Assembly (NCBI GenBank): GCA_976226885.1
Contig: OZ320314.1
Span: forward strand, 31,000,001-31,064,000
Length of the DNA: 64,000 nt
Direction: 5' to 3'
Origin: Iphione sp. A-MEVVRFRX5
Taxonomy: Eukaryota
Shown: one piece after another, positions 4,156 to 51,200 of the stretch
Layout of the letters: every line of letters begins with the position of its first letter
Numbering within the stretch: position 1 is the first letter of the stretch
Position numbers and translations under genes: made by a program
Notes under the pieces: generated by a model
Told to the model about the DNA's origin: nothing
Databases searched by the model: none
The model's input: only the letters and a program-made list of their open reading frames with translations

Positions 4156-6889
4156 TATATCATAAAAATCAGGTCCGACAAATGGATCAGATAGATATTT
4201 TTGACGTACTTGTGTTTGTATAATATTTAAATATGGATATCGTTCATGTAAAGACGAGGCAAAACCAATACTTTGACCCAGTGCCGCCTTGGAGTCTCTG
4301 ACGAAAAAGAGGATATCATAGTTTACACCAAAATGGCAAGGAAAGGTATTATACTTGTACTGGTTAAAGCGTATGAATCCTGACAACCCACAAACCCGGA
4401 CAGCGTGGAATCTAAACCTTTAGCGGGCAAGCACTTATATTTCAATATTTCTGTGTGTTCCTCCACAGAAATATACACGGGCACCTTTAAATACAGTAGC
4501 GAAGATCAAGGGTATAGGAAATTTAGACCATCGAAGGAAAGGTTAGAAAATAATCAGCACGTTCATATCAGACCATTCAAGAGAAACGTACATTGGAATG
4601 AACTTTTCAGCCTGTGTGGTATAGGCCAACATTTTGTCCAAGGCTGAAGCTAAAAGATTTGTTATGGGCTGGCAGGTCAGCCGATTATGGATTTATCTAT
4701 GTGGATAACATGTGGGGAACTAGCTAAGTCCAACTGTCGAGGACACACGACAGATGAAGAGTGGTAGGCCACCGACATCAACCCATGTACACGTAGGACA
4801 GTATCTGCAATGGTCAGTCTCCAAATGGATCGCACATACACACGTAAGACAGTATCTGGAACGAGCAGTTTGCAAAGAGATCCAAACGAAGAGACTCCTC
4901 ATTTAGCACAGACATGTGTAAATATGAGAAAAGAGGGAAGGTCGATAAGCTGAATTGGAAACGATACTTAAAGACGAGACGATTCGGCGTTGGCTGGTCT
5001 GTTATAAGGCAAGTGCCAATGGAGAGGCCCGCGTCGGTAGATATAAACACATGTTCAAACTAACTGCGGGGTGGGGGACAGAAGTTCTCATAGGACTCAG
5101 GTCTCAGTAATGTCAGGCGCAACAACCTATACTGGGCAGTTTCACACGGACAAACATGTAACAAGGCGATTGATACTGCGAGGAAGGTAGGAACGAGCCT
5201 TTGAAAGGTAGACGCTGACCCCACCTTGGGAGGGACCAGAAATGTTCACGTCAGACGGATTGTCACGCCATCTATGGGGACGGCATGACGTTTACCAAAG
5301 CAGACATTTTGACATATCGGTATTGTATCGCGGGTAAAGCCATATAGATGGCTTTCACACAATATTTCAGAGGACGGGGCTGCAAATATTCTCTTTATTC
5401 GAACGACTTACCAATACTAAGGCTTCAAGCTGAATGAAGAAGAATGGCAAACATCCTCACCCCCGAAAATGATGAAATAGTTTTAGCACGCAGGACGATG
5501 AATGACCGAGTGTGGGCAGGTACCAGGGTCTTCACAGAAGATCAAGCCGCAACCCTGACAGGAGGAGGGGCTTTGAATAATCCCGACCAAATGAGGTTTC
5601 AGCACGCCACAAGATGTAGCGCAGTTGGATCGTGGGGTCAGCTAGCAGTGAAGAAGCGAAGCTGCTGTCATGAAAAATAGCCATCTTTTGCATGCACCTT
5701 ATGAGCAAGACTTGCAAATATCAGGCCATTTATTTACATTTGACATAGACGGATACATCTCTAGGAATGGTCAGCGTTGCCTCATTGAAAAAAAAGAATA
5801 AGATGGAAGTGAGGCGAACGGACATCGAACCGACATCGCGCAGAAGTAACACGAAGGGCCATAGAGCAAAAAAAAGAGAAAAACTTGAGAAATGGTGCAT
5901 CGCTCGCACACAAGACCCTACATGGACCTTAATGCGTTGACATCGGTACAGTATCGATGCCGAACGTACTTAATATGCGGCGTATCGACAGGGGAAACCT
6001 GAGAAAGTCGACACACCCTTGGGAGTTGAGACAGAAGGCGGGAAGAGGAGGACTGTACTGCCAAAACGTACGAGGCACGACACGTTGTGCGCCTGACACA
6101 GGTCGTATACGGGACTGCCACATGTCCACAAGGGCCGGCAGGCAGGGTGCGTGCACTCACATAGGAATACGTGGCCTGGGTGGGTGTTTCTCGACTACAG
6201 TTGCCATCAGAATCACCGCCACCACCTGGGGGCGATCTGTCTTATCTACATCAGCCTACTAGGCAACCACGGCACTGTGTTTAAAGCAGCTCCGCAAGAA
6301 ATGAGACTTATTGTGTCTGGAATGGTGTGTCGTATGAGTGCTGCTTATGGAGACTCACATGGCACCGGTACCATAACGAAGCCCCCACTTAATTCTTCAT
6401 AAGAGAGACTGTCCTACAGAGGAGGGGGGGGGGGGGCTAAGGGGCAAATCCACGTCTTCCTGAGAGACAATAAGTCACTACATAAGTCGGAGAAGGCCCT
6501 CCAGGACTTAGTGCCAGACGGCACCAAAGGGGCTTCTGCTATGCAAGCAAACAATCAGACAGCGCCATAAACAGGCACAGTCAATAAGAGAGTGGCAGAG
6601 CACAAACGGTCCCTACATTAGCAGACTGCAGGCCGTTTCTCATGCTCGACGTTCCCCCCCCCCCCCCCCCCCCATGCGACTTGGCAGATGGATGGGCAGC
6701 CGATGAGCGTAGCTTGGTGTAGAGACAGGGAGTCCATCGTGAGAAGTAAATTGAACTTTATTTCTTTTACATGACCTCTGCTGTAAAAGAGGCGTTTACA
6801 TCCAGACGCTCCTTGCCTGACACGTTTTTTTTATATATGTGGATGTGTTAATCAGAATAAATACCTCTATATGTGATTAGATGTACATA

Positions 6890-7135: not shown

Positions 7136-7927
7136 GCCAATGTAAAAGTTCAACAGGGTTGACTAGTGGTGGGAATTATATGGCCAAATAATGTACAGCT
7201 ACCGTTCTAGCACCTCTTCGACATAACTAAATGTATGTGAATAAAGCTCGTTCATTCTTTGTGTTCAGGATACATTATTATTACCACGTAAGCAGACAGT
7301 ACCGATCATGCCTACCAAACCATAACATTATTGAAAGTTCAGGACCGATATTGCCTACTTACAGGGTGCGTTGTGCGACGCCTACCAATCTGTCTAAATC
7401 ACTGGATATGAACATGTTTTGCCCCGTTCAAAGCGTTATGTATGGGCTCACTAACCAGCTAGCGCCGGCAGGAACGTCTATACATACTCCACCTACGGAA
7501 TGAGAGCGTTGTTCTGGATTAGGTAAGGGCAATCTGAAATTCTATCGGCTGTTTCATGAATAATTCACCACTAGGCCCCCCTATAACGGGTTAAGAAGCA
7601 TGACGTGATTATCAGGACTGCTGTTCTTACAGGGAACTACAACGGTACGGTCACAAGGGAGAGGCTGTCCCATCATGCTGTCCGTTAGTACATGCCAGAA
7701 AGCCCAAGGTAGGACCTAAATATCGCGGGCTGAATGAAAAGGGGAAAAAAGAGAGACGCAGGAGAAAAGGAGAGAGTGACAAAGAGACAGAGAGAGACAT
7801 ACGATTGGGTGAAGAGAATGACAGTAAATGAAAAAGAGGGGGAGATATGGGGAAAATCGGGTGAAAGTAAAGGGAAAAAGAATAAAGACGCGGGAAAGTC
7901 AACGAATAAGAGAGACATGAGAGAGAC

Positions 7928-7929
<2 letters not shown>

Positions 7930-7996
<67 letters not shown>
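7930..7996. repeat. (GA)n microsatellite inside a purine-rich low-complexity tract (~7725-8330)
   Basis: Directly visible uninterrupted AG run. It explains the spurious LSLSLS ORFs on the minus strand. Confidence 0.97.
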
Positions 7997-7999
<3 letters not shown>

Positions 8000-10900
8000 G
8001 GTAAATATAAGAGAAAGCAAAAAGTGAGAGAGAAAAAAATAAAGGGGGTCGCAGTGAATAAAAATATGGCAGACTGAGAGATGAAGAAAATGAAAGTGAA
8101 TGAATGAAAGTGAGAAAAAAAGAGAGAGAGAGAGATTGGGGTGAGGGGAGTGACAGTGAAACGGAGACAGAGATGCGGTGAAAAGGGTGAAAGTGAGCGA
8201 ATGAAATAGAGAGGAAATAAAAGAACGAGAATGCGAGAAAAAATGAGAGAGGGAAGGAGGGAGGAAGGGAGTGCTTTTAACAGTAAAAACGATGTGGTAC
8301 TGCGAGGCAACAAGACAGACATAGCTACATGAATGTATAGAATGAATCGAAAGAGGAAAACAGATTTATTGACAAATGAGCTGAACATATATGCATGGAG
8401 ACAAGGTTTTTCATTCGATGCTTATCTAGCCTTTTAGTGTAACAGGCAGCGCTAAAAGCCTAATGAGGAGGAGTACTTGATGTAGCTAACTAAACATCAA
8501 ATGATAATCTATAGGTTGAATCTTACGTAAAGCTTTCCTGTTCTCCATATATCAAGCTACTAATAAATGTTCTTAGTTTAACCACATATATTGATGTGGG
8601 ATGGCTGGACTGGGAGCAAATCCATCATAGCTATAGAAGTGCAGGGCTCTAATATATTTCCTTGCAGGTATAATTCGCACTTTATGATTACATACGTATG
8701 ATTCTACACTGGTTGCATGAGCTTCAGGATGTGGTCACTAACGAATCGTATTTAAGATGAAATGTGGATGATCCATTTTGTCAACTAAATAGTGCTGTTA
8801 CTAGCCGTTCTGGCTGCCTTCAGGTTACTGCGACTGATAAAGGCTACTTCTACATAAACATTCGAAACCGTGTCTTTCCAGATTCAAGTAATATTTCAGC
8901 TGAAGGCTATCAAGCTACAACATAGAGACAATTGCGAACTGTTGGCCAACCGCAAAGGAAAGTCTTGGTCAAAGTATTTTTTCCACAATTTGTATCTTGT
9001 TACTGTGGTAACATCCAGCGCAAAGATCATTGCGTCCAGCCATTGTGTATCATTATACAGATGTTTTGACAACATGGCCAGCATAGCACCAAACGGCACT
9101 AATTCTGTGAAAGGCTGTATATACACACGTATGTATATACACACAAACATATATGCAACGTTCGGCTCTTTTCATGAGCATTACGAGGCAGGTGCACCGG
9201 GTCTATATGAGACTGATGCACTTTACTGGGGAAACTTTTCTTCCGCCTCTATTTTATGCTTCAGCAATCGCATGACAAATAGCCCCGTTCGCTGTCAGAA
9301 CAAATACCCTGCGCATCCACAGGCATTAAATTACCAGCCACATTCACGCACCGCTTCCTACTCGCTCTCACTTAATGGTTGGTTCTGAGCGATAGAAGTG
9401 CTCTGTCTACTGAACTGTAAGGGAATATGATCGCTATGTTCCTATTAAATTGCAACTTTGTCTTACTTCCGGTATCACCGAGTAAAATGCGAACCCCAGG
9501 AAATAAAATGATGTGTTTGAGACATACAACGATGCTATTTTGTCATGTTGACAAGTCAACGTCTTACCGACAAAATAATTTAAAACCTGGTTATCTCTGT
9601 CATGCAGTTTTATGCCGCAGGAATAAATGTCTTTATATTCTCAGTTCTCACATCAACTGGCGTAAAGTATGATGCATTGCTGTTACAAATGTAAATCTCT
9701 CCCTGGGTCAGGACAGGATAACACTCCGTAATCTCTGATGAAAATAAATTCTATGAGAATCTTAACCTTGTAGTTATTTGTTTCTAATTCACTTGGATGG
9801 GAAATTCTGTGAATTTGGGATTTTCATCTTGCCAATCCGCCGATGTATGGCTGTGCCATTCATCGAACGATTCGCTGACTAGTTTCCCTGCAAATCAAAA
9901 ATGGAGCTACCCTGCCAAATTTAGTTTAATATTTTTGGTCGGGACAGCATTTCTCTTTAAGATAAACGGCTGTTCTTGATCTCTTTGGAAACCTGAGCAG
10001 ACTTTGGCATACGGGTGGAAATACAGGTAGCAGGATCTGACTGATCAGTCAGAGCGATCGGTTAAAAAGCCAGGTCGGGACACAGCAGAGACCAGCCCGA
10101 AAGCTCCAATCTTGTCGGTCGTTGTAACCATCTTCAGTCCAATACTGCCAGGGATGCCGTCCACATACAACAAGGTTAATTTAATCAGTGTGCTTGGCAA
10201 TGGTCCTGGTAGACAGAAGCCTGGAAGCCTCATCAATGACAGTCTTCCTTTCCAGGACAGAATATCTTCTTTTAATGAGACAGTGGCAATGAATGCGACA
10301 CAAAGCCATAATTCCTTATTTATTACTGTGAATTTGTCGAAGGATGCTATAGAATAAAATACATGAAAAAATGATAATTGATCACTTTCATCATAAATCC
10401 TGCTTTGGAGGCATCTGTTTATATAACGTAACTATATATTGTTGTCTATCAGCTGGACAATTGTTTGTGTATAAAATGCCAAAGACAGTTCTTCCCAGAA
10501 GTATTAATTGTCTAGTCACGATAGACATACTTATGTATAGTTTCTATAGTATCATGAGGAATATTATCTTTCTTCGTACTGCTGCACTGTCCTCCTAGCT
10601 CGATCCGACATTTTAAAATGCTCTGTTTCTTTTGTATATAAAATGGCCTGTTTCCTACTGCAGGTGGTCCACACACCTCAGGCAGTAATTGGTCGCTCAT
10701 GCATTCCTCCCAGGGCAGAGATGATTATCCGCTGAGCTGGTGCTTCCAGCTGCTTTCCCGTGGTGCCTATGGCGGCATTGACGTCCAGGGAGGCAATCAA
10801 ATTTCTATCCTACAATCAGACGCTGATGGATTATATGTTGAGATGGGAAAGGCAATTTAGTCCAGCATGAACTCCGCAAATATATTCATTAAAGCACCTG

Positions 10901-27234: not shown

Positions 27235-27394
27235 TTTCATGGAGGTTTAGGCATATTGGTAGAAATGGTGCAGTTTTTCATGGAGGTTGAGGCATAATGG
27301 TCAAAATTGTGCAGTTTTTAATGGAGGTTGAGGCATATCAGTCGAAATTGTGCAGTTTTTCATGGAGGCTGAGGCATATCAGTAGAAATTGTGT
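27235..27394. repeat. 41-bp minisatellite, 4 copies
   Basis: (C/A)ATGGAGG starts at 27238, 27279, 27320 and 27361. The unit is ~CATGGAGGTTGAGGCATATCAGTAGAAATTGTGCAGTTTTT. Confidence 0.92.
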
Positions 27395-28510
27395 GGTTAT
27401 TATACAAATCATATACAAATAAGATACAATATCTATCACGTGATAGACAGTGTCTATCCAACTGAAAACCTCCATGTCTCTATTTTACTCTTCTGTGTGC
27501 ATGCGTGGTGCAGAAAAAAAATGAATATTGTACGTTTTCTGTGAAACATATGTGTGTACCAATGTAGTCCACTTTGATGAACACCCAAGACTCTTCTGGA
27601 GGTATCTCATATTATACTGTCTGATGTATGTCCATGTCAAAATGAACACACCCCTATTCTTACCCAAAGACAGCCACATAATACCCACTGATAATGCTTA
27701 AGAATGTGCACCCCGAAATCTAAGGTGCCACTGTTATCTGTACAGTGAGACCGGTGACTGGAGAATGAACCCCAGGACATAAATATACAAGTAAATTTCA
27801 ACAGCAAATTCAGTGCGAATGAAATCAAGGTAAATATATAGGAAAGGTCAGATTGGTAGAGAAGGGACTGCCTGGCTAGGGACATCAATAAGTATTAGCA
27901 GTTATTACATTCTACTGTTTTCAATAGAGAAGTACGGAATGTATTTTATGACCACGTTTGTGTGGACAGCGTATGCCAGCCATACAACAGGAAAAAAAGA
28001 ATGAAAGTAGATGATTCCGAGTTTCATATCAAATAATGCCAAAAAATGCATGTCATAAAACTGTGAATGTGTCTAATAAACAAAATGAATGTTTGGGTTG
28101 ATTTAACCTTCTAAAGTAGAAAGTAAATAAAGACTAGCTATTTTGTATCCGAATATGATTTTTTAAGTTCTATGGTGTTACTTCTTTATATTTCAAGCTC
28201 ACTTTGTGTTTTAGCTGCTCTAGTAGATAATAGGGATAAAACACATTTCCTCATGCTATGGTTTTAAATTGCGCCAAGTTCCACCAAGAGAATAGACAGT
28301 GGCATCATAATGTGCAGCTAATGATTGCCTAACACCTCTAAAAGAAAATACTAAACAGTTCTGTCGGCAGTTATTACACTACCTATTAAAAACATTGCCT
28401 GAAAGTAGTCTGTCCCCAGTAAATCTCACCCCATACTGATGTGAGTTCAGAAAAAGATATTATTTATTGAATTCATTGATATATTTGTGAATATCACTAA
28501 GAAAGGTAAA

Positions 28511-28675: not shown

Positions 28676-29505
28676 TTAAATAAAAACTTATTTTGCCTTT
28701 TATAAACCGCTGAGCACAAACCGTATAGATGAGAGTGTGATTGATTTGGAAATCACCCTACGCGAAATAATCATAGACGAAGGTGGAGAGGCAGCGTCAT
28801 GCGAAGATACAGTGTCCCTGTTTTACTTGCGTTAACTGTTCTATACTCCATAAGCAACCTAATGTACATATCATATAAATAAGGTTGATTAGTAGAGGGT
28901 TTCCAATCCACTCTATGAGACCTACTACGTCATCATGACTAGATACTTGCCTTCAATACTAGGTTACAGACATTCAGTTAAAGGTATCTAACGTAATGGC
29001 CCTTTCATTCACACAGCTACTGTCAGGCCGGTGCCCACGGGGTGGTTACATATATTACACAAATGTATTGACGAAACTGCACTTATTGTCCAGCTTGGAA
29101 TGACAAGTCAATAGAAGGGCGCAAGTGGTCACTGGTCAACCCATTCTTGGCATGGACAGTAGTAAATGTGAGATTATTGGATGACATTGTTTGCACTAAC
29201 TGGCAAACGACTGGCTGTGGCGGGCTTGCAATGGTTAACACTTGCGACAAATTTGTTCGCGGTGTGCTGTTGCTTGTTCAGGCCCATATGTTCAATTCCC
29301 TCGCAATCGAGTTCCTCCCTCCTGATGGAGCATTCCATGTGCGTAACAAAACGCAATAGGCCAACGGCTTTACGTATTTATCGGTGGAAAAGACTCAGCG
29401 TTAATAAGGTAAGAAGGATGATTGAAAGGACTCGACTATTGGCCTACTACTGGCCAACCCATTTAATAACCTGCCAGGTTAAACATTTTCTATTTTATGT
29501 ATTGG

Positions 29506-29634
29506 ATACAGCACGAGGGCGTGCATGTATGCGTTATATTGGCACGGTTTGGATTAGCTGCACGAGACGAAGTCGAGTGTGGCTAATCCAAACCGTGACA
29601 ATCTAACGCATACATACACGCCCAAGTGCTGTAT
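29506..29634. repeat. 129-bp imperfect palindrome (63-bp arms, GAA loop at 29569-29571)
   Basis: Manual pairing gives ~54 Watson-Crick pairs, 2 adjacent G-T pairs and 7 mismatches, including a tandem GA/GA next to GAC-GAA-GTC. Confidence 0.95.
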
Positions 29635-29797
29635 GTAGCTTAAAGCACGGCTCCACACGTACACATAATCAATGAACCATGACTGAAAGAACCAATAAGA
29701 ACCTCTTCATTACTTGCTTCATTAGAATATTCACATAGATTGCTTTGGTTCAAATTACAAACCCCAACCGGTACACTGCTGTCACGACGGTCTAACC

Positions 29798-31464
29798 ATG
29801 GACTTGTTGGATGTCCCAAATTTCGAGATCGAATTAGATCTATGCACTCAAGCAGATCAAATGGAAAGAGAGTACTTATCACAAACCCAAACTCAGGAGT
29901 CTAGTCAAGAAGATGATCTTGGTAGTCGATTTGCACCTGTTCAATCCGATCATGAGTTTAAGGCTTTCATTGCATCGAGGATACCCAAGAACACGCAACA
30001 ATCATCCAATTGGGCTCACAATATATACCGTGAGTGGAGAACATGGAGGAATGGTCATAGCAAATCTCCTGGTGATAGGAAATGGCCTGTCCCCGCCTTG
30101 ACCACTGAGAAGTTGGACTTATTGGACTACTGGTTGGCCCGTTTTGTAACGGAAATTCGGAAGAAGGACGGAGACGACTATCCCCCAGGTAAGCAGCATT
30201 TCATATGCCTATCTATAGCATGGGTGGGGGGGGGACCTCATATCAGGAAAGGTTTTGAAGATTTTATGTCTTATTTGTTCCAGGTACACTTACCAACATA
30301 GCCGCCTCTATTCAAAGATATATGCGGGATGTCCTGGGCAGAGCGGACATCTGGTTGTTGAAGAAGGACGGCCCACACTTCAAGGTTTTCAGAGACGCCT
30401 TGGACGCTCGGAGGAAATTGCTTATTTCTCAGGGGGTTGGCACTCAACCAACACGTGCAGACCCCATATCCATGGACGATGAAGTTGAACTCTGGGAGTC
30501 TGGAGTAATTGGATTTCATTCCGCTCAGTCATTGTCATATGCTTGTTATTTCTATAATTGCAAGCTGTTTGGTTTTCGAGCCAGGGACGAACATGCTAAT
30601 CTAATGGTCGAGCAGTTCACCTTCGGGACCGAACGAGATGGGTCACAATTTCTGCAATTCAATGGTCGTCTTGCAAAAACTGTCACAGGAAAAGTCAGCT
30701 CGAAATCCACTCCAAGGGTTGTAAAGCACTACGCTCAGCCTGAGAATGAACGATGTGTAGTCAAGATTTTTAGGAAGTATATTGCATTGATTCCCCCTTC
30801 AGGCAGGTTTTACCGTAGACCCATGGCGAACGTTAATGGCCATATAATATTCAGTGTTCAGCATGTCGGTGTGAACAAATTGTCACAGTATATGGCCTCT
30901 ATGTTCCAGTCTGCTGGGATCGACACGGAGGGCCGGAACATTAGCGGCCATTCCGGCAAGGTGACGTGTTGCACTACTCTTTACGAGCATGACTTTGACG
31001 AACAGGCAATCACCTCGCGAAGTGGCCATAGGTCCAACGCTGTGCGTTTGTACAAGAGGCCATCCATTGAGCTTGAAAAACGCATTAGTAATTCACTCCA
31101 ACCACCCCCGCCCAAAGCCACCAAGCCTGCCACCATTACTCGTCCTGAACCAACCATGAATCATGCCACCAGTCATAAACCCTCACATTCCACCCCTATC
31201 AGGACCCCACCTGTGCCCTCCCCGTCCACTAATGTAATGCCGGTCACCCCAATCAATCCGCACACATCCAAGGATCAAATCGTCCAAACAGAAATGACCC
31301 CCCCTCTCCAAGACAGCAATCACTCACTACCTCCCTCTCCCGCCCAAGGTACCATTCAAATGGCCTCTTTGATTGATCGGAAAATGTTTACGGTTGTCGT
31401 TCCCTCAGATGTTTATCAGGTCGCCATAATCAAGGACGACAAGAAGGTTGTAGTTCAAATTTAA
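29798..31464 (+). CDS. DUF3504/Crypton tyrosine recombinase, 523 aa, join(29798..30188,30284..31464); family related to the ZMYM2/3/4, QRICH1 and KCTD1 C-terminal domain
   Basis: Kozak accATGG. Exon 1 has RIPKNTQQSSNWAHNIYREW..LDYWLARFVTEIRKKDGDDYPP, which splices in frame to GTLTNIAASIQRYMR. Catalytic-type residues are R229 (FGFRARDEH), K262, H353-x-x-K356 (SGHSGK), H379 (SGHRS) and Y387 (VRLYKRP). These are followed by a Pro/Thr-rich linker and a short hydrophobic C-terminal segment. There are no stops or frameshifts. Confidence 0.92.
30189..30283 (+). other. 95-bp phase-1 GT-AG spliceosomal intron
   Basis: The donor is CAG|GTAAGC and the acceptor is TTATTTGTTCCAG|G. Removal joins the ORF at 29798 to the ORF at 30322 in frame and restores the family motif YPPxTL. 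Confidence 0.9.
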
Positions 31465-31716
31465 CTTGTTTTATATGTTTTCCTACTGTAATGTGTGTGC
31501 AATTAATCTCCTTTGCTGTATTTGATCATTTCAGCGATTCTTTAAGTCAAACAGTATTTATCCGTCTAATGCCATTCTTTTTACAGTCATAATATTGCAA
31601 TTATTCCCATTCTACCACGGTTCTTTCGAAGTATTTTTATGTCTTGCTATATTAATTATATGTACATTCTATTTATATTCATCCTGCTATTTATAATTTG
31701 TGTTTCACCCGTCATG

Positions 31717-31722
31717 AATAAA
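31717..31722 (+). promoter_or_regulatory. Candidate polyadenylation signal of the recombinase gene
   Basis: AATAAA about 250 bp after the stop codon, within an AT-rich 3-prime UTR and inside the element. Confidence 0.5.
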
Positions 31723-32229
31723 AACTCTTTTTACATTAATTCTAACTATGATTTCTTTTCCTTCCATCCAACACTCTAACAACGCTCACCCCAATGACAT
31801 ATGCAACCCACTAATCCACAGCTAACGACACCTCCGGCCCTCATGTATTCAATGCGGCAGCTTGTTTGTGTCACCTACCCACCCGTGCTGTATGCGAAAT
31901 AGTCGCACTGCACGGCTACATAGGCCTAAAGAGAAAAAAAGATGGCCGCCGTGCTTTAAATGGTAATAGTCAATTGAGAAGTTAACTTCACTTCATTGCA
32001 ATAATTGATCCTAAAATGAATAATCTATTTACTTAAAGCAGGACAATCAAAAAAGAAAATCAGAGGAAATGAATTGCAACACTCAATATTAGCCGAATTC
32101 GAGCAGGAGTGCTTTCCGCCTATTGACGGATGTGCAAGGAATGGTATTCTAAAAAAAATCGTTCTTGCAAGTGAGCATGCTTTAATCTGATGTCTCTTTG
32201 AGGCCCATTACTTTACATAAGTATGTCGT

Positions 32230-40186: not shown

Positions 40187-40895
40187 TGCGTTAATAAAAA
40201 CCGCCCATTAGTCACTTCGCTAATAGCCATCTGAATCAAGGGAATATACGCGAATATACGAAGTGGACGGAAAATTCCTAACATTGTCTTTCGTGTAATC
40301 TGATAAGAACATTAATGGCCATTTTGAGATACACAGAAACTCTTTTACGAGGAAAAATGTTCCCTATCAAAATTTTATACTAGTATAATTACATTTCTAT
40401 GGCATATTTCCTTGGTAAACCAGATCGAGAAAAAAAAAATCGGGAAACTCTTTCCCTGCCAACAGGTCAAGAACCTATTGAGAAAAGCCTCTGAGTTGGA
40501 AAAAAACACCCAGGAACATATAGTAGGGGAGAAAGACAGGTATTATAGGTATCAAGGATAAATATTTAAAGACAGGAATGCATAACATGTGCAAACACCA
40601 GAGGATCACAAGCTAGTGGTAAAGGTCATGGCCTCCTGGTTCCGAAAAGAGCTCATTCCCACTGGGACCACCTCTCTAATTCACATCGCCACTGCATTTT
40701 GACTACCATTGAAAATACTCGTCTCATACATTACTGGTGCCATCAGATACAATCAGCAGGTTTTCATTTTGAGGAACACACAGGGCGGATGCGGGCATTT
40801 CTCTTTGTGATGACCAGTTTATTATAGATTTACGGTATCTGCTACAATCACCTCAGGGTTAAGGTAATTTTACGCGATTTGCATCAAGCATCTTA

Positions 40896-40945
<50 letters not shown>
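40896..40945. repeat. Compound (GT)n(GA)n microsatellite
   Basis: Directly visible. Confidence 0.97.
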
Positions 40946-40949
<4 letters not shown>

Positions 40950-43900
40950 TAAGCATTCAGGGAGAGGATAGGGATATGATTTGAGATAAAGGTCAAGAGG
41001 AGAGGCCAGATCAGCTTGTATCAAATGAGTGGCTACAACGGGCTGTTTAGGGGCTTTTGTAACATCGTAATAGAAATTGGACCAATAGAAACATGTAATT
41101 TTAAGAAAAAGTTGGAAAGCGCTTCATAAATCTTGTTGTAGCAGAGTTTTTAAGTGTTCTGCGATGGGTCTATTAGGCAAGACCAAAGGACAGCAGAAGG
41201 TGACTATTAGATACTGATTACAGGTATTTCCTACGGGCACCAACTCCTCCAGTCGGTCCTTATCGTCCATAGAGACAGCTTGTGGACGGCATTAAACCGT
41301 CCACGGTTGAAATGTACGTTGGCATGTTGGTATGTTGTGGTTCACCAGACTTACTAGTGCTCTGCAGAGAGTTGCGAGTGCTCCTCTTTCGATTAATGCA
41401 AGGCATCATAATTAGAGCAATGTTACTTTGAATTTAGTTACATGTATTGATATTTGTATAGGAGTTTTTAGTGTTCAACCGTAAGATTTGCACATATTGA
41501 CCGTCCGAGTCTATCATCTTGAAACTGAACTGGCATAGATCATATTTTTGTAACCATAATGCCCAGAAGGAATGAAAAATCACATTCACAACCTGGGTCA
41601 AATCTCGCAATTAGGACAAAAGCTGCTTACCCATAGCAAAAATGTTAACAAAAATTCAATCGGCTGAGATATTGTCACTGAAGTCTATAGTAAACAGATG
41701 GAACTATCCTCGTATAACACCCGCTTTGAATATTGATCATTCAAGTGAGAACCAATGTAAGTAGCATTACAGAGGGTGTACCGTAATTATCATCTACATA
41801 ATATAAAAAAAGGCCTTTATCAAAAACCGCGGCTGGTGCGTATCTATCAAAAACACCGGAGGAAAAAAGAAGGTAACTGACGGCAGTTTTTGCCACATCT
41901 AGACGTTGGGAACGCAGAAAAAACAGATTATCGTGTTTTTATTAGTGGGACGCGCTGTTGGTCTTGCTCATCGAAGGCTCTGTTCATGGTAGATCAGAAC
42001 TATATGAAATAGGAGATCCAGTTCACATATACATGTACCAGGATAACCAGTGACGGTGACATTTTTGCATATGTTAGACAAAACACTTGATATTTTACTG
42101 ATGGAGCAGGGCCAGTTTGCTTTTTTACTACTCCGAGTTGGTTTGAGTGCATTCTGAACATAAATAGCATGGTAGTATATCTAGATCTTTTTAAATTGCA
42201 CCACAAAAAACATATTTATTGTTGGTACATTGCAAGCAACAGTGGTTTTTTTATTTGTGCACAGCGCACATGGCAAACATGCAGGGTGAATTCTACAAGC
42301 TGTAGTTTTTCCTGAATAGGCAGGGATTTTCACCAGTGGATTTGGCGAGTACATTGGACATGCCCTCCTTCGAGTTTGTTGTTCCGCAGATGCGCCGGTC
42401 AGCGGTCGGCATCTCTCGGCTTGAACGATCGCGAGTGTGCTGGTGCTGCCACCTGTATGATCAGGATGTTTGTTGGGATACTGATCCCGAAACTGCTGCT
42501 GATACTCTTCTCATGTGTGTGGTCCCTCAATGAACTCAGTCCCTGTCCGTCACAGATCTCGCTGCATTTGCAATATTCCTGTTTATTACCGGTACAGCGG
42601 GACTTTCACTATCTTTTCAGTCCGGGAGAGGCACACGTATACAGTCTCCCTACACAAGCCTGGAGAACTTACTATTCGAGCATGTTGTGCCGTTTAGTAA
42701 CTTATGTACGACCCCCCCCCCCCTTCCTGGCATAGTGCTCTTGTTTGGCTAATAACCCTGAATTTTGTTATCTCTACTTTGGTTGATTCTGGTTTCGTGT
42801 TAGGTAACGTACATGTGGGGGCTGGCACGAGGCCCTCCCAGTAAACCTCCCCTCATCAAAGAATGGGTTCGACATTAGAACAGAATGTTATTTTAATCAG
42901 CTACAGTCATCTTGTATACTGTTTAACATGTCGTAGAAATCCTGATGGTTCGTTTGATACCAGTGCTCTCATAAGGGAACATTATACTAAAGATGTGAAT
43001 TTAAGTATTATTGACAAAGTAACTCAGTCTCCTTTGTATGTGTGATGTAATGTAATAAATGCGCAATATAAAAAAAATCTAGAGATCCTTCAAAACATCT
43101 ACCCCTGACCTCAAGGCATAATTTAGCCTTTGCCTGAGAACGCCTGGCGGCATCATTCGCACTTCTAGGGTTAAAGGGACTGGACTTTCTAGGATGGCAT
43201 GGCAACTCAGAAAAAGAATCAGACACAAATGCTAGTTTTACATGTACGCATTGTTCACACTCCTGCTATTGCATGTGTTTGCGTTTGACTGATCAATTTA
43301 TCAGTAGGAAAGTAAGTGTTAGGAACGGATGCATGTGAAGAGCCTAATTAAATTCAATATCAACTCAGTAACGCCGATGATGAGGCCGTATGTCATTTCG
43401 TCGTGCAATTAACACATACGTTGCATAAAAGACAATCACAGCTTAACTGCTTACTTGCTGTTTAAGAATATGCTCTCATTAAATCTCATATAAAACTTTG
43501 CTTCTCGTGCTTGTACCGCCCTGATTTTGACTTCGTTCTCGTCGGTTTTGACATTTAGAACCATATTTTACATTTACGCCAGAGTTTAGTGTACTTATGT
43601 ACTGAAGCTATTGTTTTAATTATGATTTTAAACCTACCCGGTGAAAACTGCGGCGGCTTTCTCCTACATTTTAAAAATGTTATTCTAAGATGTTAGCCAT
43701 ATCTATATGCAAGAAGACCCCTCCGCTGAGTTTGTGTATCCCCACCTGCGTACTGCACTGGACTTGCGACGTACATGTAACATGTAACACGTAGACAGCG
43801 TTGTACTTCTTGACCCCCTTAAGTTCATTTTGATTTATCCTCTTTGCCATTCCCTGACTCCTACACCATTAATATTTATATTTCATTTCATTTTACTTCA

Positions 43901-48067: not shown

Positions 48068-48273
48068 TAAGTTGTTTTAACAGTATTTCAATGATTTAGT
48101 TTAATATATAGGTTATATTATTAACTGTCATCTAGCGAACTATTTTGCAATCGGGCAATGTTTGTCAGACATTATCGCTAGCAAGTTGTTTTAACAATAT
48201 TTCAATTATTTAGTTTAAAATACACATATTTAGTTTAACATCGGGCAATGTTTATCAGACATTATCGCTAGCA
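48068..48273. repeat. Tandem duplication with indel (two units of ~90-115 bp)
   Basis: AAGTTGTTTTAACArTATTTCAAT.ATTTAGTTTAA and ATCGGGCAATGTTTrTCAGACATTATCGCTAGCAA each occur twice. Confidence 0.85.
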
Positions 48274-51200
48274 ATAAATAGTGAAAAAGAACTTTCGTCC
48301 AAGTTATGAAACATATCTGAATGGGAATGATTATATCCACCCATCGAATGGTGAGAGACCGTATAATGCAGCAGCCGTCATCATTGTCGTTGCAGTACTT
48401 ATTGCAAAAGACGCGGAAGAGATGTTCATACTGGATACAGGACATCGGCAACAGGGCAAGTTATAAAGATAAATGATCTTGGAGGCGAGCCAATTATCCC
48501 CCACCTGCCTCTTGCTAGGTGCAATCTTACCTCCGGTAGCCTGGAATACCCGGTCATTGCCACCCACAGCCGGGAGAGAGGACTTTCAACTGTGATATTC
48601 ACACCTATTATTAGATTCGATTTGTGTTACACTCCGTCACGTTTTCATACATATTATAGTAAAATGTGATCATGGGTTACTGGGTTGACAAAGTGAAGGG
48701 TGTGTGCATTTTTGCATGTGGTTTCTGTTCGAACGGTATGCTGGAAGTATAAAATGGCTTGGAAAGAATACTATTTAATGCTAGGTTACTTTACTGAGTA
48801 CTAGGATTGCGTACTTCTGTATTATACCCTGCCGGCCCGCATTCTTGATTGATGGCCTCTACTCAATGTTTGTGTAAGGTTCAAGTGATATTTGAAGGGG
48901 TACAGAGAACGTAAAATCCAGAAACAAAGAAGCACGAGGAGGAATGGAAGATGAAAGGCGGTGAAAGGGGAATCTTGTGACTTGGATGTAATTGAATGTT
49001 CAGTTCGACTTGAACAATGGAGACTGTATACTTTTATCGCGATATGTATCATTTACGGATAATATAACGAGCTCCTTACCAAAAGAAAGATTTCTAGTAT
49101 GAGATGTAGGGCGGAGGGGAGGGTGACGCAGAGAGACACACAGAATAGAGACAAAGTAATGTTTTAATAATCAAAGGTCTAATGGCACGACAAATTTGCG
49201 CTGTAGAATAATGTAGTGTGATACGATTTATCCCCCTTCATCATCTTTAATTGGGTATGTCTCCAACCACAAATTTCATGATGAAAATCATACATACTTC
49301 TCGATCCTCACACCAGGGGGCACCACCTTCCCTGGCGATACACGAGGGTCTTTTGACTCCAGCCAACTTAACAACTGAACACTTCACAGAATTGGTATTT
49401 AAGGTAATGAAACATAGATGCACTAAAGCTTATTCCAATGATCGGTCTTTAACCTCATCCAGTCTCTATCGCGTCATCTTAATTAGTACTGATTTCCCCA
49501 ACTATAGTAACGTTAACTTACGACCGCCGGTGAAAAATGTAGAATACGATCCACCTTACCTGAAAGGAAAAGAATCAGGAAATTTAGATTCATGCATTTA
49601 TATAGCATAACTTCAATACACTCTTTTCTCGTTAATAGAAAATTCATTTGTTACTATTTGTTGTAAGCTGGTATGAAAGATGAACTTAGGCCACTCGCGA
49701 AATCACACTTTGATCTCTGAAACTGTAATGATAAAAATTAGTAAAAAGGAGTGAATTTATGGTACGTATCATCTGAAACTCTAGCCTTTGACGTGACTCT
49801 TATCATTCGGTGATTTATGTGATATTGATAATAACGTTAGATTTCAGGAGATGCGCAGCCTATAGCAGTATCAAAAACTAACAACAATTGATTGGAGCCA
49901 TCACATTAAATTCTATCATCAGAGAAAGACCTAGCACTTATCCTATCGCTGCTCATCAACGGACCGACCAAACATTGGCATTTGCAATCTATCGTGCGGC
50001 TTTTGTGAGGATTTCATTCTTAAAACAGAGCAATTTAAATCTCGACTAGATCCTCCACAAACCAAAATTGAGAAGATAACATGGGGGTCACCCTGTCAAT
50101 TAATCTTTGTACAATTTAGCACTAAAAAGAAGCCATATAATTGGGTACAATTAGTCTATACTTGAGAGTGACATTTGTAGGCCAGAATATAATGAATCCC
50201 GCAGGTATTAATCTACAGGTAGCTGCAGTGCCCTCTATGGAGATCTAGCCAATAAAGAACAATCTTCGACGTAGGGACTTGTTCCATCTTCAGATGATGT
50301 GCTTGGACTGCTCTCTATTTCTCTTGAATCTACTATTGTGAGACCCTCTTTGAGACTGTTTGACGGTGAGCGGCCTAACGGGAAAAATTAAGCCTATACT
50401 AAGTCTAACAAAGACTGCACCAAGGGTCGGGTGTCTCGGGTGCTCCCTCAAATTTTGTAGGCGACCTGCTATGGATGGCTCTATGTCGGTTTCAACCGAC
50501 ATCTTGCGAATGCCTCTACTAGGGACAATACAGAGATCGGTGAAGGTGGCAGCGAACGGTAGCAGCGTATCTTAAATTTCAAGCCCTCCTGCTTCCTACA
50601 TCTGTGGGCAAGTGTCTTACAAATGATGCAACCTGAGATACCCCTGGCCACCCCCCACCCCCCGGCATCAATGACCGGTGTGTTTGCCTCTACCTTGGTA
50701 ATTAGCCTAATGATGGCGGTATGTATCCCTGGGTATAAACCATGTAGCCTGACATGTAACCTTGCAGATACACCACAACAGGCCCCGGGGATATGTGACA
50801 ATACTCTTCTGTTTTTTTACATGTAATTATATTAAGTTCCCTTAACATAAACCCCTAATTTGAATACACGCCATATTCCTATTTCCAGACCATAAGTTTT
50901 ACGAAAAGCTTACTTACGTAGTAATATAATGCATTAAACTTTACACCCTATATAAAACCTACACCGTCCCACAACACAGATATTGGCCGTCTTGATAGCG
51001 TTAAAACTGTATAGCCAGTAATTTAATACTCCAAGACCCATTAATATTTGTTATCCATGTTGCATTATAAGCCATATTGCTTCTCTAGGAGCATTTACCG
51101 GTATTCCGACAGATGCCCCTACTCTTGCAGATACATGTATAAACAAAGTGTGACGTTCACCATACATGTAGCTGCTCAAACACGTGGTATGGTGAGAAAT

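What the first reader, a model, noticed from the sequence alone, without database searches (positions are those of the whole stretch)
29506..29634. 129-bp hairpin with GAC-GAA-GTC cap and tandem GA mismatches upstream of the recombinase
Seen: 63-bp arms, a GAA triloop, a GA/GA tandem mismatch and two adjacent G-T pairs, ending ~160 bp before the ATG. Established: GNA triloops and sheared GA pairs stabilise ssDNA hairpins; parvoviral termini use such hairpins; protelomerases (TelN, ResT) are tyrosine-recombinase relatives that make hairpin ends from palindromes. Speculative inference: the structure could be a cruciform or hairpin-ended intermediate, a replication primer for the excised element, or a structured RNA cofactor. 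Its inversion would only swap the mismatches (flip/flop forms).
Basis: partly seen in the sequence, partly recalled or inferred. Interest (0 to 1): 0.75.

Follow-up and report, generated by a model that had tools for sequence, protein, structure and literature searches.

The report
Crypton transposon's conserved terminal DNA hairpin
The 129-base palindrome is real and forms the conserved 5' end of a Crypton-type jumping gene; the same odd G·A mismatches are kept on one strand in distant animals, which suggests its recombinase acts on folded single-stranded DNA, a mechanism known so far only from bacterial integrons and a cholera phage.

Summary
Window 29506-29634 is a 63+3+63-nt imperfect palindrome (z = -14.5) with a GAA triloop, a tandem G·A/A·G mismatch and two G·T pairs, ending 163 nt before the ATG.

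It is not a stray foldback. It starts 7 nt inside the 5' end of a 2.46-kb CryptonA-type tyrosine-recombinase transposon (29499-31959/60).

The same architecture recurs in eight or more diverged families. These include Ptychodera flava, Mytilus edulis and a ~600-bp non-autonomous derivative. The shared parts are:
- a 5' GT-initial spacer;
- a long hairpin whose apex is C-GA-G / short GC stem / GNA-type loop / C-GA-G;
- a 4-5-nt spacer;
- box B, whose inverted copy B' is the exact 3' terminus.

Arm sequences are randomised between families but stay paired. The G·A mismatches always lie on the ORF-sense strand (24 G·A against 1 T·C).

My best reading is a recombination site read as a folded single strand, laid out like an integron attC or CTXphi attP. 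The top-strand cleavage point it predicts (B'|spacer) matches the mapped element ends. There is no target duplication and no shared core.

Protelomerase, flip-flop and RNA readings are not supported.

The scan had already noted Crypton palindromes on other pieces of this genome. The open literature I searched does not describe them.

The parts
29499..29505 (+). 5' terminal spacer spJ (GTATTGG); inferred first bases of the element
   Evidence: By analogy with mapped ends in two related families: GTAAGG in F6 (four insertion sites) and GTAGTAG in L003/L004r. Homology with L001 starts here. Only one copy of this exact family was available, so the end is inferred to within about 1-2 nt.
29506..29568 (+). 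Left arm of the palindrome. Contains half-site H (29506-29515, ATACAGCACG) and arm box A1 (29526-29543).
29569..29571 (+). GAA triloop closed by C-G (a GNA-type DNA mini-hairpin cap)
   Evidence: The equivalent loops in relatives are GCA, GCA, GTA, GTA, ACA, GCCA and GTTA.
29572..29634 (+). Right arm of the palindrome. Contains inverted box A2 (29597-29614) and the inverted half-site (29625-29634).
29563..29577 (+). Apex module C-GA-G / AC / GAA / GT / C-GA-G. The tandem G.A/A.G mismatch sits 3 bp below the loop.
   Evidence: The same module is found in every related hairpin.
29515..29516 (+). Outer GA of a second purine-purine tandem mismatch, opposite A29624-A29625. It is C-GA-G / C-GA-G in relatives.
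29635..29639 (+). Internal spacer spI (GTAGC) between the right arm and box B
   Evidence: It is 4-5 nt in all families.
29640..29651 (+). Box B (TTAAAGCACGGC). It resembles half-site H and is complementary to the 3' terminus.
   Evidence: I7, 12/12 complementary. Conserved with co-variation in L001, L003, L004r, F6 and L016.
29798..30188 (+). Recombinase exon 1 (N-terminal QRICH1-like domain)
30189..30283 (+). 95-nt GT..AG intron
   Evidence: reading frame restored; 523-aa product.
30284..31464 (+). Recombinase exon 2 (DUF3504 / tyrosine-recombinase catalytic domain, with stop)
   Evidence: PF12012, 1.1e-18. R98, K131, H222-x-x-K225, H248 and Y256 are invariant.
31717..31722 (+). AATAAA, the likely poly(A) signal. 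It leaves the last ~240 nt outside the mRNA.
   Evidence: inference
31889..31906 (+). Third copy of the arm box (A3), in direct orientation relative to A1, 54 nt from the 3' end
   Evidence: D5; 14/18 match, with 3/198 controls as good. The best match lies 38-54 nt from the 3' end in 5/5 families.
31948..31959 (+). Box B' (GCCGTGCTTTAA), the inverted copy of box B. Inferred 3' terminus of the element (31959 or 31960).
   Evidence: I7. The terminus is mapped exactly at the end of B' in F6, and at the end of B' plus one shared A in L003/L004r.

Best explanation
The palindrome is the main cis-acting site of a CryptonA-type tyrosine-recombinase (YR) transposon, window 29499-31959/60.

Shown:
- The element begins with a 7-nt spacer followed at once by the hairpin.
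- 5 nt after the hairpin lies box B. Its inverted copy B' is the element's 3' terminus.
- A third copy of an arm box lies about 50 nt from the 3' end.
- This layout is conserved in eight or more diverged families and in a non-autonomous derivative.
- Arm sequences co-vary between families.
- The C-GA-G/C-GA-G mismatches and the GNA-type loop are kept, always on the ORF-sense strand.

Inferred:
- Box B and the base of the left arm are copies of one recombinase half-site (W-T-A-n-A-n-C-A-Y-G).
- In a circular or looped form, B' pairs with B and the left arm pairs with the right arm. One folded sense strand then presents a complete YR core site: two duplex half-sites flanking unpaired spacers. 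This is how integron attC sites and the CTXphi attP(+) hairpin work.
- The recombinase cuts the sense strand at the canonical place, just 3' of the half-site B'. That is exactly the mapped element boundary.
- It exchanges only that strand, and replication resolves the junction.
- This accounts for the absence of a target duplication and of any core shared with the target.
- The sheared tandem G.A pairs mark which strand is the substrate and keep the hairpin recognisable.
For: 1. The hairpin is real: (z = -14.55).

2. The adjacent gene is an intact Crypton YR. One search finds QRICH1, DUF3504 and a weak Phage_integrase match. One search shows invariant R, K, H-x-x-K, H and Y. Searches give a 523-aa spliced ORF.

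3. The same hairpin sits at the same place in relatives:
- L001 and L003;
- family F6, L006/L013/L014;
- Ptychodera flava L015 and Mytilus edulis L016;
- the mini-element L004 3311-3907, which keeps only the two ends.

4. Ends are mapped from independent insertions. F6 runs from 5' GTAAGG plus hairpin to a 3' end exactly at the end of B', with no TSD, at four sites. L003 and L004r give the corresponding ends.

5. There is structure without sequence. In the 10 positions below the apex, 70/80 cells are paired with 2-6 pair types per position, while sequence identity between families is 29%. Shifted controls give 24-32 paired of 72-80 cells.

6. The strands are asymmetric. In six ORF-oriented hairpins the non-Watson-Crick positions are G.A/A.G 24, T.C 1, G.T 7 and C.A 2. 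The sense strand folds 2-7 kcal/mol better than the antisense strand in 8/8 hairpins.

7. The two CGAG motifs at the apex lie 10-17 nt apart along the duplex but always directly opposite each other in the fold.

8. Junction constructs (last 20 nt plus 5' end) fold with B' on B, adding 7-18 kcal/mol. The joint then lies opposite the internal spacer.

9. The A3 box is consistently placed.

10. From established knowledge: YRs cleave the strand 3' of the bound half-site, at the 5' edge of the spacer. IntI/attC and XerC/CTXphi use folded single strands and a single strand exchange resolved by replication.
Against: - No experimental or read-level evidence was available; no sequencing run was listed. 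No circle, single-stranded form or junction was observed.
- Only one copy of the window's own family was available, so its ends are set by analogy.
- A source of single-stranded DNA in an animal nucleus is assumed, not shown.
- Outer GA/GA motifs are sometimes plain Watson-Crick pairs (L006, L015), so not all mismatches are essential.
- The predicted duplex junction site has a 9-10-bp spacer, and the internal site a canonical 7-bp one. That would also fit a purely double-stranded multi-site complex.
- The Ptychodera copy is flanked by a 10-bp direct repeat. The single-strand model does not predict this.
- The recombinase belongs to the DUF3504/Crypton group, not to the IntI or Xer groups.
- The families share ancestry, so the orientation counts are not independent events.
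Confidence: 0.5

Rival explanations
1. The site works only as double-stranded DNA. The palindrome, box B/B' and the three arm boxes are ordinary duplex binding sites for recombinase subunits. These assemble attL and attR into an excision/integration complex, like the lambda arm sites or the three FRT elements. The hairpin never forms, and the GA asymmetry is a directional signal or a historical accident.
For: Half-site-like repeats have YR core geometry: the right-arm end, a 7-nt spacer and box B. Arm box A is conserved in sequence between families and present three times. Non-autonomous copies keep exactly these regions. The canonical Crypton model uses a double-stranded circle (PMC3212892).
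Against: It does not explain several observations:
- The arms co-vary freely while staying complementary over 45-80 bp.
- The only conserved mismatches are the thermodynamically favoured 5'-Y-GA-R-3' tandem pairs, placed exactly opposite each other despite variable linear spacing.
- G.A and G.T fall on one strand.
- The loop is a GNA cap.

A duplex reaction with unrelated target spacers should stall, or should leave the spacer at either end. Instead it is always at the 5' end.
Confidence: 0.25
2. The hairpin is an origin or priming signal. After excision the element exists as a circle, possibly single-stranded. The stable hairpin recruits host primase or polymerase for complementary-strand synthesis, as the minus-strand origins of single-stranded phages and rolling-circle plasmids do.
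For: The fold is strand-specific and stable, with a GNA mini-hairpin cap of the kind known from phage replication origins (my own knowledge). The hairpin lies in non-transcribed terminal DNA. Another piece of the genome carries a head-to-tail array noted by the scan (s1-325160, unchecked).
Against: This alone does not explain why box B' is the exact terminus and pairs with box B next to the hairpin. Nor does it explain why the hairpin base repeats the terminal half-site. No replication protein is encoded. It could be a second role rather than a rival.
Confidence: 0.1
3. The hairpin is an RNA hairpin: a regulatory 5' leader, a small-RNA precursor that tunes or silences the element, or an RNA cofactor.
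For: The favoured strand is the sense strand. Tandem G.A in the C-GA-G context and G.U pairs are also stable in RNA. There is a weak mir-466-like match (25 bits).
Against: The Rfam match is far below the gathering score (25 against 85 bits) and is symmetric on both strands. The hairpin starts 7 nt from the element's 5' end, so an integrated copy has no upstream promoter of its own. TATA-like boxes in L001, L004 and L015 lie downstream of the hairpin. Triloops of GNA type closed by C-G are DNA-typical, whereas RNA prefers tetraloops (my own knowledge). Solo and mini elements without a gene keep the hairpin.
Confidence: 0.07
4. The hairpin belongs to a hairpin-end mechanism. Either the palindrome is cut at its centre by the recombinase to give covalently closed hairpin telomeres (protelomerase-like), or it is a parvovirus-like terminal hairpin replicated by hairpin transfer.
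For: Protelomerases are YR relatives that act on palindromes. One metagenomic copy (L102) has its apex module inverted relative to the rest of the hairpin, so inversion of part of the hairpin can happen.
Against: - Mapped ends lie outside the palindrome.
- The centre is a non-palindromic loop flanked by mismatches.
- There is one hairpin per element, not one at each end.
- Orientation is fixed in all ORF-linked copies and in about 19 of 20 copies of the high-copy family, unlike the 1:1 flip/flop of hairpin transfer.
- No Rep or HUH protein and no protelomerase-specific domains are detected.
Confidence: 0.03
5. The hairpin is an unrelated foldback or MITE insertion, or a chance or assembly palindrome, that happens to lie upstream of the recombinase gene.
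For: Solo hairpins of this type do occur as dispersed short elements in metagenomic animal contigs.
Against: It holds the same position and orientation relative to the gene in six ORF-linked families from different phyla. It lies inside the mapped element ends, and it is linked by sequence to box B/B' and box A3 of the same element. The fold z-score is -14.5.
Confidence: 0.02

Closest known systems
CryptonA DNA transposons (Goodwin 2003; Kojima & Jurka 2011, PMC3212892)
   Same: A single spliced gene for a DUF3504-type tyrosine recombinase with an N-terminal QRICH1-like domain. About 2.5 kb long. No TIRs at the two ends, no target-site duplication and no terminal direct repeats in animal members. 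Non-autonomous internal-deletion derivatives exist. Found in molluscs, hemichordates and other animals.
   Different: The published descriptions I could read say that animal Cryptons have no terminal repeats, and they mention no palindrome or hairpin. Here a 90-175-nt subterminal hairpin, box B/B' and a third arm box define the ends.
Integron attC sites recombined by IntI (my own knowledge of the system)
   Same: An imperfect palindrome of about 60-140 nt acted on by a tyrosine recombinase. It is recognised by structure rather than sequence. One strand is chosen through non-paired features. Two paired boxes flank an unpaired central spacer, with a variable terminal structure beyond them. The crossover lies at one edge, so that an integrated unit carries most of the site at one end and a short piece at the other. 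Single-strand exchange leaves no duplication.
   Different: The host is eukaryotic and the recombinase is of the Crypton/DUF3504 group without the IntI-specific insertion. The strand markers are tandem sheared G.A pairs rather than extrahelical bases. There is no GTTRRRY box. There is no attI platform; targets are dispersed AT-rich sites ending mostly in ..AT. Nothing has been shown biochemically.
CTXphi attP(+) forked hairpin integrated by XerCD (my own knowledge)
   Same: Two inverted recombinase core sites separated by about 90-150 nt pair within one DNA strand to make the functional site, with non-complementary spacers. One strand exchange is then resolved by replication.
   Different: CTXphi is a packaged single-stranded phage using host Xer and a fixed dif target. 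Here the element encodes its own enzyme, and no single-stranded stage is known.
DIRS1-type internal complementary region (YR retrotransposons)
   Same: An internal sequence is complementary to the joined termini. The right arm plus box B is the reverse complement of B' plus the left arm. The two ends can therefore be brought together on a single strand.
   Different: There is no reverse transcriptase, no long inverted terminal repeats and no split direct repeats. The complementary region abuts the 5' end and forms one hairpin with it.
IS200/IS605 and Helitron subterminal hairpins
   Same: Subterminal imperfect hairpins on one strand, insertion without duplication next to a short preferred sequence, and abundant hairpin-bearing non-autonomous derivatives.
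   Different: Those elements use HUH (Y1/Y2) nucleases and much shorter hairpins at both ends or at the 3' end.
Protelomerase targets (TelN, TelK, ResT) and parvoviral terminal hairpins
   Same: A long palindrome associated with a YR-related enzyme, or a mismatch-bearing DNA hairpin at a genome end.
   Different: The ends are not at the palindrome centre, flip and flop forms are not in equal numbers, there is a single hairpin, and no Rep is encoded.

Membership tests
Crypton (CryptonA) transposon | Encodes a tyrosine recombinase of the DUF3504/Crypton type as its only enzyme | tested here: met
   PF12012 at 1.1e-18, PF25561, and weak PF00589; no other long ORF in 29499-31960; homologues in Lingula, Ptychodera and Mytilus.
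Crypton (CryptonA) transposon | Catalytic residues present (R..K..HxxR..H/W..Y) | tested here: inconclusive
   R98, K131, H222, H248 and Y256 are invariant. The second arginine is K225 (H-S-G-K) in all nine aligned proteins, a conservative and family-wide change. Activity was not tested.
Crypton (CryptonA) transposon | No TIRs at the two termini, no LTRs and no target-site duplication | tested here: met
   (relatives with several insertion sites). For the window copy itself only one copy was available. The Ptychodera copy has a 10-bp flanking direct repeat.
Crypton (CryptonA) transposon | Short (4-6 bp) terminal direct repeats as the recombination core (fungal and stramenopile Cryptons) | tested here: not met
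   Searches find none. This agrees with the published statement that animal Cryptons lack them, so it does not exclude CryptonA membership.
Integron attC site | Imperfect palindrome of about 57-141 nt that folds as one strand with paired boxes around an unpaired central spacer | tested here: inconclusive
   The geometry is present in silico. B'/B and the arm base flank unpaired spacers of about 7 and 5 nt. Folding in vivo was not tested.
Integron attC site | Extrahelical bases that select the strand; R' box GTTRRRY | tested here: not met
   The strand-specific features here are tandem G.A pairs and G.T wobbles. There is no GTTRRRY at the boundary.
Integron attC site | Recombined by an IntI-clade integrase next to attI and Pc | tested here: not met
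   The enzyme is DUF3504/QRICH1-type in an animal genome. It works like attC at most and is not a member.
Protelomerase target site | Perfect dyad at the centre, cleavage 6 bp apart across the axis, and replicon ends at the centre | tested here: not met
   The centre is a GAA loop with GA mismatches. Element ends are mapped outside the palindrome.
Parvovirus-type terminal hairpin | Hairpins at both ends, flip and flop forms in similar numbers, and a Rep nickase | tested here: not met
   One hairpin per element. Orientation is fixed in all ORF-linked copies, with 1 inverted apex in about 20 copies of a related family. No Rep was detected.
microRNA precursor (Rfam mir-466) | Score at or above the family gathering threshold | tested here: not met
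   25 and 23 bits on the two strands against a gathering score of 85 (E = 0.19-0.62).
DIRS-like YR retrotransposon | Reverse transcriptase/RNase H genes with ITRs or split direct repeats plus an ICR | tested here: not met
   No RT ORF in the element. Only the ICR-like complementarity to the joined ends is shared.

The most novel reading that the evidence does not exclude
CryptonA transposons of animals move through a folded single-stranded DNA site. The sense strand of the element's two ends folds into an attC/CTXphi-like hairpin marked by sheared tandem G.A pairs. The Crypton recombinase performs a single top-strand exchange at B'|spacer, and replication completes the transposition. This would be the first eukaryotic tyrosine-recombinase system that uses a structured single strand as its substrate. 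It would also explain why animal Cryptons have no terminal repeats or target duplications.
Probability: 0.3. Interest if true: 0.85.

Novelty: new variant of a known kind. Interest (0 to 1): 0.72.

Why it matters
Cryptons are the least understood class of eukaryotic DNA transposons. Their ends are called "difficult to characterise", and animal members are reported to have no terminal repeats at all. No transposition mechanism has been shown, even though several vertebrate genes (ZMYM2-4, QRICH1, KCTD1) descend from their recombinase.

A conserved, strand-specific terminal hairpin with a defined half-site, spacer and terminus gives three things:
1. A practical signature for annotating Crypton ends and their gene-less derivatives.
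2. A concrete, testable mechanism, including a predicted cleavage point.
3. A possible eukaryotic counterpart of the single-strand recombination used by integrons.

If the recombinase does recognise a folded strand, it would also be of interest as a structure-guided integration tool.

Tried and rejected
- Sequencing runs for the element or its gene: none was listed. Read laying was therefore not used, and neither transcription nor circle junctions could be checked.
- Rfam: only sub-threshold mir-466-like noise.
- L007 and L008 (short contigs): no hairpin visible. L007 ends 50 nt before its ORF and breaks inside a possible hairpin.
- Lingula L002: only a short, rearranged hairpin-like remnant next to the gene. 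It was not used as evidence.
- L005: its gene copy lacks the N-terminal exon and a 5' hairpin. The hairpin 290 nt downstream of its 3' box has no gene after it.
- MAFFT alignment of apex modules (A5) was out of structural register. I therefore counted pairs on an alignment anchored at the two CGAG motifs instead of using count of structure pairs. No covariance model was built.
- Metagenome scan with the F6 apex 17-mer: most of the 120 hits are unrelated GC-rich bacterial sequences. About 25 are true hairpins, and none carries a recombinase ORF. Their link to Cryptons therefore rests on architecture and on L039, an F6 fragment.
- A search for a flanking direct repeat or TSD in the window copy found nothing convincing; the short TTTA shared between flanks is within chance.
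- The ENA assemblies ERZ25767047 and ERZ25071797 and the JGI samples Ga0126336-43 could not be assigned to species with these tools.
- No contig was taken for human and no N runs were met. The contigs labelled human-gut metagenome among the pattern hits (L024, L034, L091, L135) showed no hairpin pairing around the match and were not examined further.
Full report
**1. The observation**

The window holds a near-perfect palindrome at 29506-29634, with two 63-nt arms and 3 nt between them. The arms are 86% complementary. As single-stranded DNA it folds at -58.4 kcal/mol, against -18.3 +/- 2.8 for 200 dinucleotide-preserving shuffles. That is z = -14.55, and no shuffle folds as well.

- a GAA loop closed by GAC/GTC;
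- a tandem G.A/A.G mismatch (29564-65 opposite 29575-76), in the context C-GA-G on both arms;
- two adjacent G.T pairs (29559/29581 and 29560/29580);
- an end 163 nt before the ATG at 29798.

There is also a second, degenerate purine-purine tandem mismatch 9 bp from the base (GA at 29515-16 opposite AA at 29624-25), plus three single mismatches. It is the only long inverted repeat in the 64-kb window, and the only hairpin with this apex (0.01 expected in shuffles).

**2. The surroundings**

Downstream lies a two-exon gene: 29798-30188, a 95-nt GT..AG intron, then 30284-31464. It encodes 523 residues with a QRICH1-type N-terminal domain and a DUF3504 / tyrosine-recombinase catalytic domain. This is the signature of animal CryptonA transposons (PMC3212892).

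The catalytic positions R, K, H-x-x-K, H and Y are invariant in an alignment with eight homologues. The usual second arginine is a lysine throughout this clade.

The best database relatives are 62-65% identical. They come from Lingula, Ptychodera, Mytilus and unnamed invertebrate assemblies.

**3. The hairpin is part of the element and is conserved**

I fetched the DNA around homologues and found the same structure at the same place, upstream of the gene and on the same strand:

| Locus | Source |
|---|---|
| L001, L003 | ENA ERZ25767047 |
| Family "F6" (L006, L013, L014) | ENA ERZ25071797 and related assemblies |
| L015 | Ptychodera flava |
| L016 | Mytilus edulis |

All share one plan:
- a GT-initial spacer of 6-7 nt (in L016 the left arm itself starts with the GT; in L015 the 5' end is not mapped);
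- a hairpin of 90-141 nt;
- a 4-5-nt spacer;
- a box B of 11-17 nt.

An inverted copy of box B (B') lies at the other end of the element. In the window, B is 29640-29651 and B' is 31948-31959, 12/12 complementary.

A third copy of an arm box lies 38-54 nt from the 3' end in five of five families. In the window it is 31889-31906, matching 29526-29543.

**4. Exact ends**

Family F6 has four independent insertion sites: L006, L013/14, L009-12 and L039. Homology starts at GTAAGG, 6 nt before the hairpin. It stops exactly at the last base of B'. There is no target-site duplication and no shared core.

In the L003 family, a ~600-bp internally deleted copy is inserted backwards in an intron of another Crypton (L004 3311-3907). 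It keeps only the hairpin end and the 3' end, at 91-94% identity. It gives the ends GTAGTAG ... GGTATAAA, again without duplication.

By analogy the window element runs from 29499 to 31959/60. Homology to L001 begins just there.

The absence of terminal repeats, and the existence of non-autonomous derivatives, agree with what Kojima and Jurka reported for animal Cryptons. Neither that paper, nor a 2022 curation guide, nor a 2026 paper on DUF3504 Cryptons mentions a palindrome or hairpin. Two full-text searches found no paper linking Cryptons to such structures.

**5. What is conserved is a fold, on one strand**

Between families the arms have diverged to chance level. The 12 nt flanking the apex on the left arm are 29% identical between families. 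Yet 70 of 80 cells in the ten positions below the apex are paired, with 2-6 different pair types per position. Register-shifted controls give 24-32 paired of 72-80 cells.

The invariant parts are the irregularities. The apex is always C-GA-G, then a GC-rich stem of 2-6 bp, then a GNA-type loop (GAA, GCA, GTA, ACA, or the four-base GCCA/GTTA), then the complementary stem, then C-GA-G (T-GA-G in L005d). One or two further C-GA-G/C-GA-G pairs usually lie lower in the stem.

Along the duplex the two apex CGAG motifs are 10-17 nt apart. In the fold they are always exactly opposite each other.

In the six hairpins whose orientation is fixed by the gene, the non-Watson-Crick positions on the sense strand are:

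| Pair type | Count |
|---|---|
| G.A / A.G | 24 |
| T.C | 1 |
| G.T | 7 |
| C.A | 2 |

The sense strand folds 2-7 kcal/mol better than its complement in 8 of 8 cases.

From established nucleic-acid chemistry, tandem G.A pairs in the 5'-pyrimidine-GA-purine-3' context are sheared and nearly as stable as Watson-Crick pairs. GNA triloops closed by C-G are the classic extra-stable DNA mini-hairpins. A duplex-only binding site gives no reason for any of this.

Two near-identical F6 copies (98.7%) differ by a GA-to-TC dinucleotide swap. It turns one mismatch into Watson-Crick pairs. So the arms can be corrected against each other, yet the apex mismatch persists everywhere.

**6. No flip-flop**

All ORF-linked hairpins have the same orientation.

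A metagenome scan with the F6 apex 17-mer brought in about 25 animal-like contigs, from JGI samples Ga0126336-43 and others. They carry hairpins of the same type from at least five more families. None has a recombinase gene. They appear to be short non-autonomous or solo-hairpin elements, nearly always preceded by ..TAT|GT.

Many of these contigs stop about 30 nt past the apex, as assemblers do at palindromes.

Among about 20 copies of the main family, one (L102) has its 17-nt apex module inverted relative to the outer GA motif and the body. Partial inversion can therefore occur, but it is rare. This is unlike the 1:1 flip/flop expected from hairpin-transfer replication.

**7. Mechanism**

Box B and the first 10 nt of the left arm are versions of one motif, W-T-A-n-A-n-C-A-Y-G. 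Examples are ATACAGCACG and TTAAAGCACG in the window, and GTTAGACAATG and TTAGAACATGG in F6.

The right-arm end, the internal spacer and box B therefore form an inverted pair of half-sites. They are about 7 nt apart in the four families measured (window, L001, L003, F6), which is canonical geometry for a tyrosine-recombinase core.

If the ends are joined, B', the terminal spacer and the left-arm base form the mirror site, with about 9-10 nt between the half-sites.

Constructs made of the last 20 nt plus the 5' end fold with B' on B. This lengthens the hairpin by 7-18 kcal/mol and places the joint opposite the internal spacer.

Tyrosine recombinases cut the strand just 3' of the bound half-site. 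On the sense strand that is precisely B'|spacer, the boundary mapped in section 4.

A full double-strand exchange with an unrelated target spacer should stall, or should leave the spacer at either end. Here the spacer is always at the 5' end.

I therefore think the most likely mechanism is a single sense-strand exchange on a folded site, completed by replication. Integron attC x attI and CTXphi attP(+) x dif work in this way. The G.A pairs would act as the strand and structure marker. The left flanks (..TTTTAT, ..TTCTAT, ..ATATAT, ..TTTAA) resemble the A/T-rich end of B', as a pseudo-half-site in the target would.

The anatomy, its conservation, the strand asymmetry and the ends are shown. The folding in vivo, the single-strand exchange and the source of single-stranded DNA are inferred.

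I give this reading about 0.5 overall. That the hairpin is a cis-acting terminal site of the Crypton I hold at about 0.9. For the specific attC-like single-strand mechanism I give about 0.3.

**8. Rivals**

- **Purely duplex multi-site complex (0.25).** It fits the repeated boxes. It does not explain the co-varying arms, the opposed G.A pairs or the one-sided spacer.
- **Priming or origin hairpin for an excised circle (0.1).** This may be an additional role.
- **RNA hairpin (0.07).** This is unlikely. The hairpin starts 7 nt from the element end. It lies upstream of TATA-like boxes in three relatives, and an AATAAA precedes the 3' boxes. Rfam gives only 25 bits against a threshold of 85. Gene-less derivatives keep the hairpin. 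No RNA data were available.
- **Protelomerase- or parvovirus-like ends (0.03).** These are contradicted by the mapped ends and the fixed orientation.
- **Unrelated foldback or chance (0.02).** This is excluded by sections 3 and 4.

**9. Caveats**

- Only one copy of the window's own family could be examined.
- The families share descent, so the orientation counts are not independent trials.
- Outer GA motifs are sometimes ordinary base pairs (L006, L015).
- The Ptychodera copy is flanked by a 10-bp direct repeat and has a second palindrome near its 3' end. My model does not explain either.
- One-armed F6 copies (L009-12) all sit at one locus, so they say nothing about the mobility of a hairpin-less element.

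**10. Earlier notes and verdict**

Earlier notes of this scan on other pieces of the same genome already describe Crypton copies with a terminal palindrome or hairpin, TTAA-containing inverted boxes, and an internal inverted copy of the circle junction. My results on this window and on relatives from other genomes agree with those descriptions. They add the strand-specific G.A signature, the mapped ends and the half-site geometry.

The element is a member of a known class carrying an undescribed, deeply conserved terminal structure, so I rate it a new variant of a known kind. Interest 0.72.

Noticed in passing
L004:3311-3907 (minus strand): A ~600-bp internally deleted "mini-Crypton" of the L003 family. 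It consists only of the hairpin end and the 3' end (91-94% identical), and is inserted backwards in an intron of a different Crypton copy.
   Followed up: yes
L102 (Ga0126338_10031282), apex at about 2856 in body orientation: One copy of a high-copy hairpin family has its 17-nt apex module inverted: C-TC-G ... TGC ... C-TC-G. The outer GA motif and the body keep the usual orientation. It is a partial "flop" form, 1 of about 20 copies.
   Followed up: partly
L019, L032, L057, L058, L060, L092, L104, L106, L108, L125, L127, L129 and others (JGI samples Ga0126336-43, plus ENA contigs): A dispersed family of ~170-nt solo hairpins and longer gene-less elements shares the F6 apex 17-mer. They are nearly always preceded by ..TAT|GT. 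Many contigs break about 30 nt past the apex. At least four further hairpin families (L088, L103, L109, L134) share the same apex. The host organism was not identified.
   Followed up: partly
L015:4683-4692 and 6650-6659; L015:6511-6640: The Ptychodera flava element is flanked by a 10-bp direct repeat (CAGGATTTAC), unlike the other families. It also has a second ~120-nt palindrome, containing arm-box-like motifs, near its 3' end.
   Followed up: no
L006:5214-7145: One F6 copy is interrupted after its gene by a ~1.9-kb insertion bounded by 860-bp inverted repeats (92% identical).
   Followed up: no
L009, L010, L011, L012 (about 2369-2443 in L009): These F6 copies have a 206-bp deletion that removes the right arm of the hairpin. 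All have identical flanks (one locus, or haplotigs/duplicates), and the encoded protein is shortened to 329 aa.
   Followed up: partly
L006:3559-3698 against L013:2652-2791: Copies 98.7% identical differ by a GA-to-TC dinucleotide swap in the right arm. It converts a tandem G.A mismatch into Watson-Crick pairs, which suggests arm-against-arm correction.
   Followed up: partly
window 30286-31461 translation, residues 222-225: The recombinase clade has H-S-G-K where tyrosine recombinases usually have H-x-x-R. It is invariant in nine aligned proteins from several phyla.
   Followed up: partly
window 27235-27398: A tandem array of a 41-nt unit (about four copies, 83-88% identical) lies 2 kb upstream of the element.
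   Followed up: no
window 7921-8000 and 40895-40950; 48069-48274: Long (GA)n microsatellites at the first two sites. At the third, a pair of 40-44-nt direct repeats spaced 90-114 nt apart.
   Followed up: no
L002:3868-3935 (Lingula anatina): A short, rearranged remnant resembling the hairpin base (ATAGATAGACC ... GGTCTAT, with internal CGAG motifs) lies just before the annotated start of the Lingula homologue.
   Followed up: no
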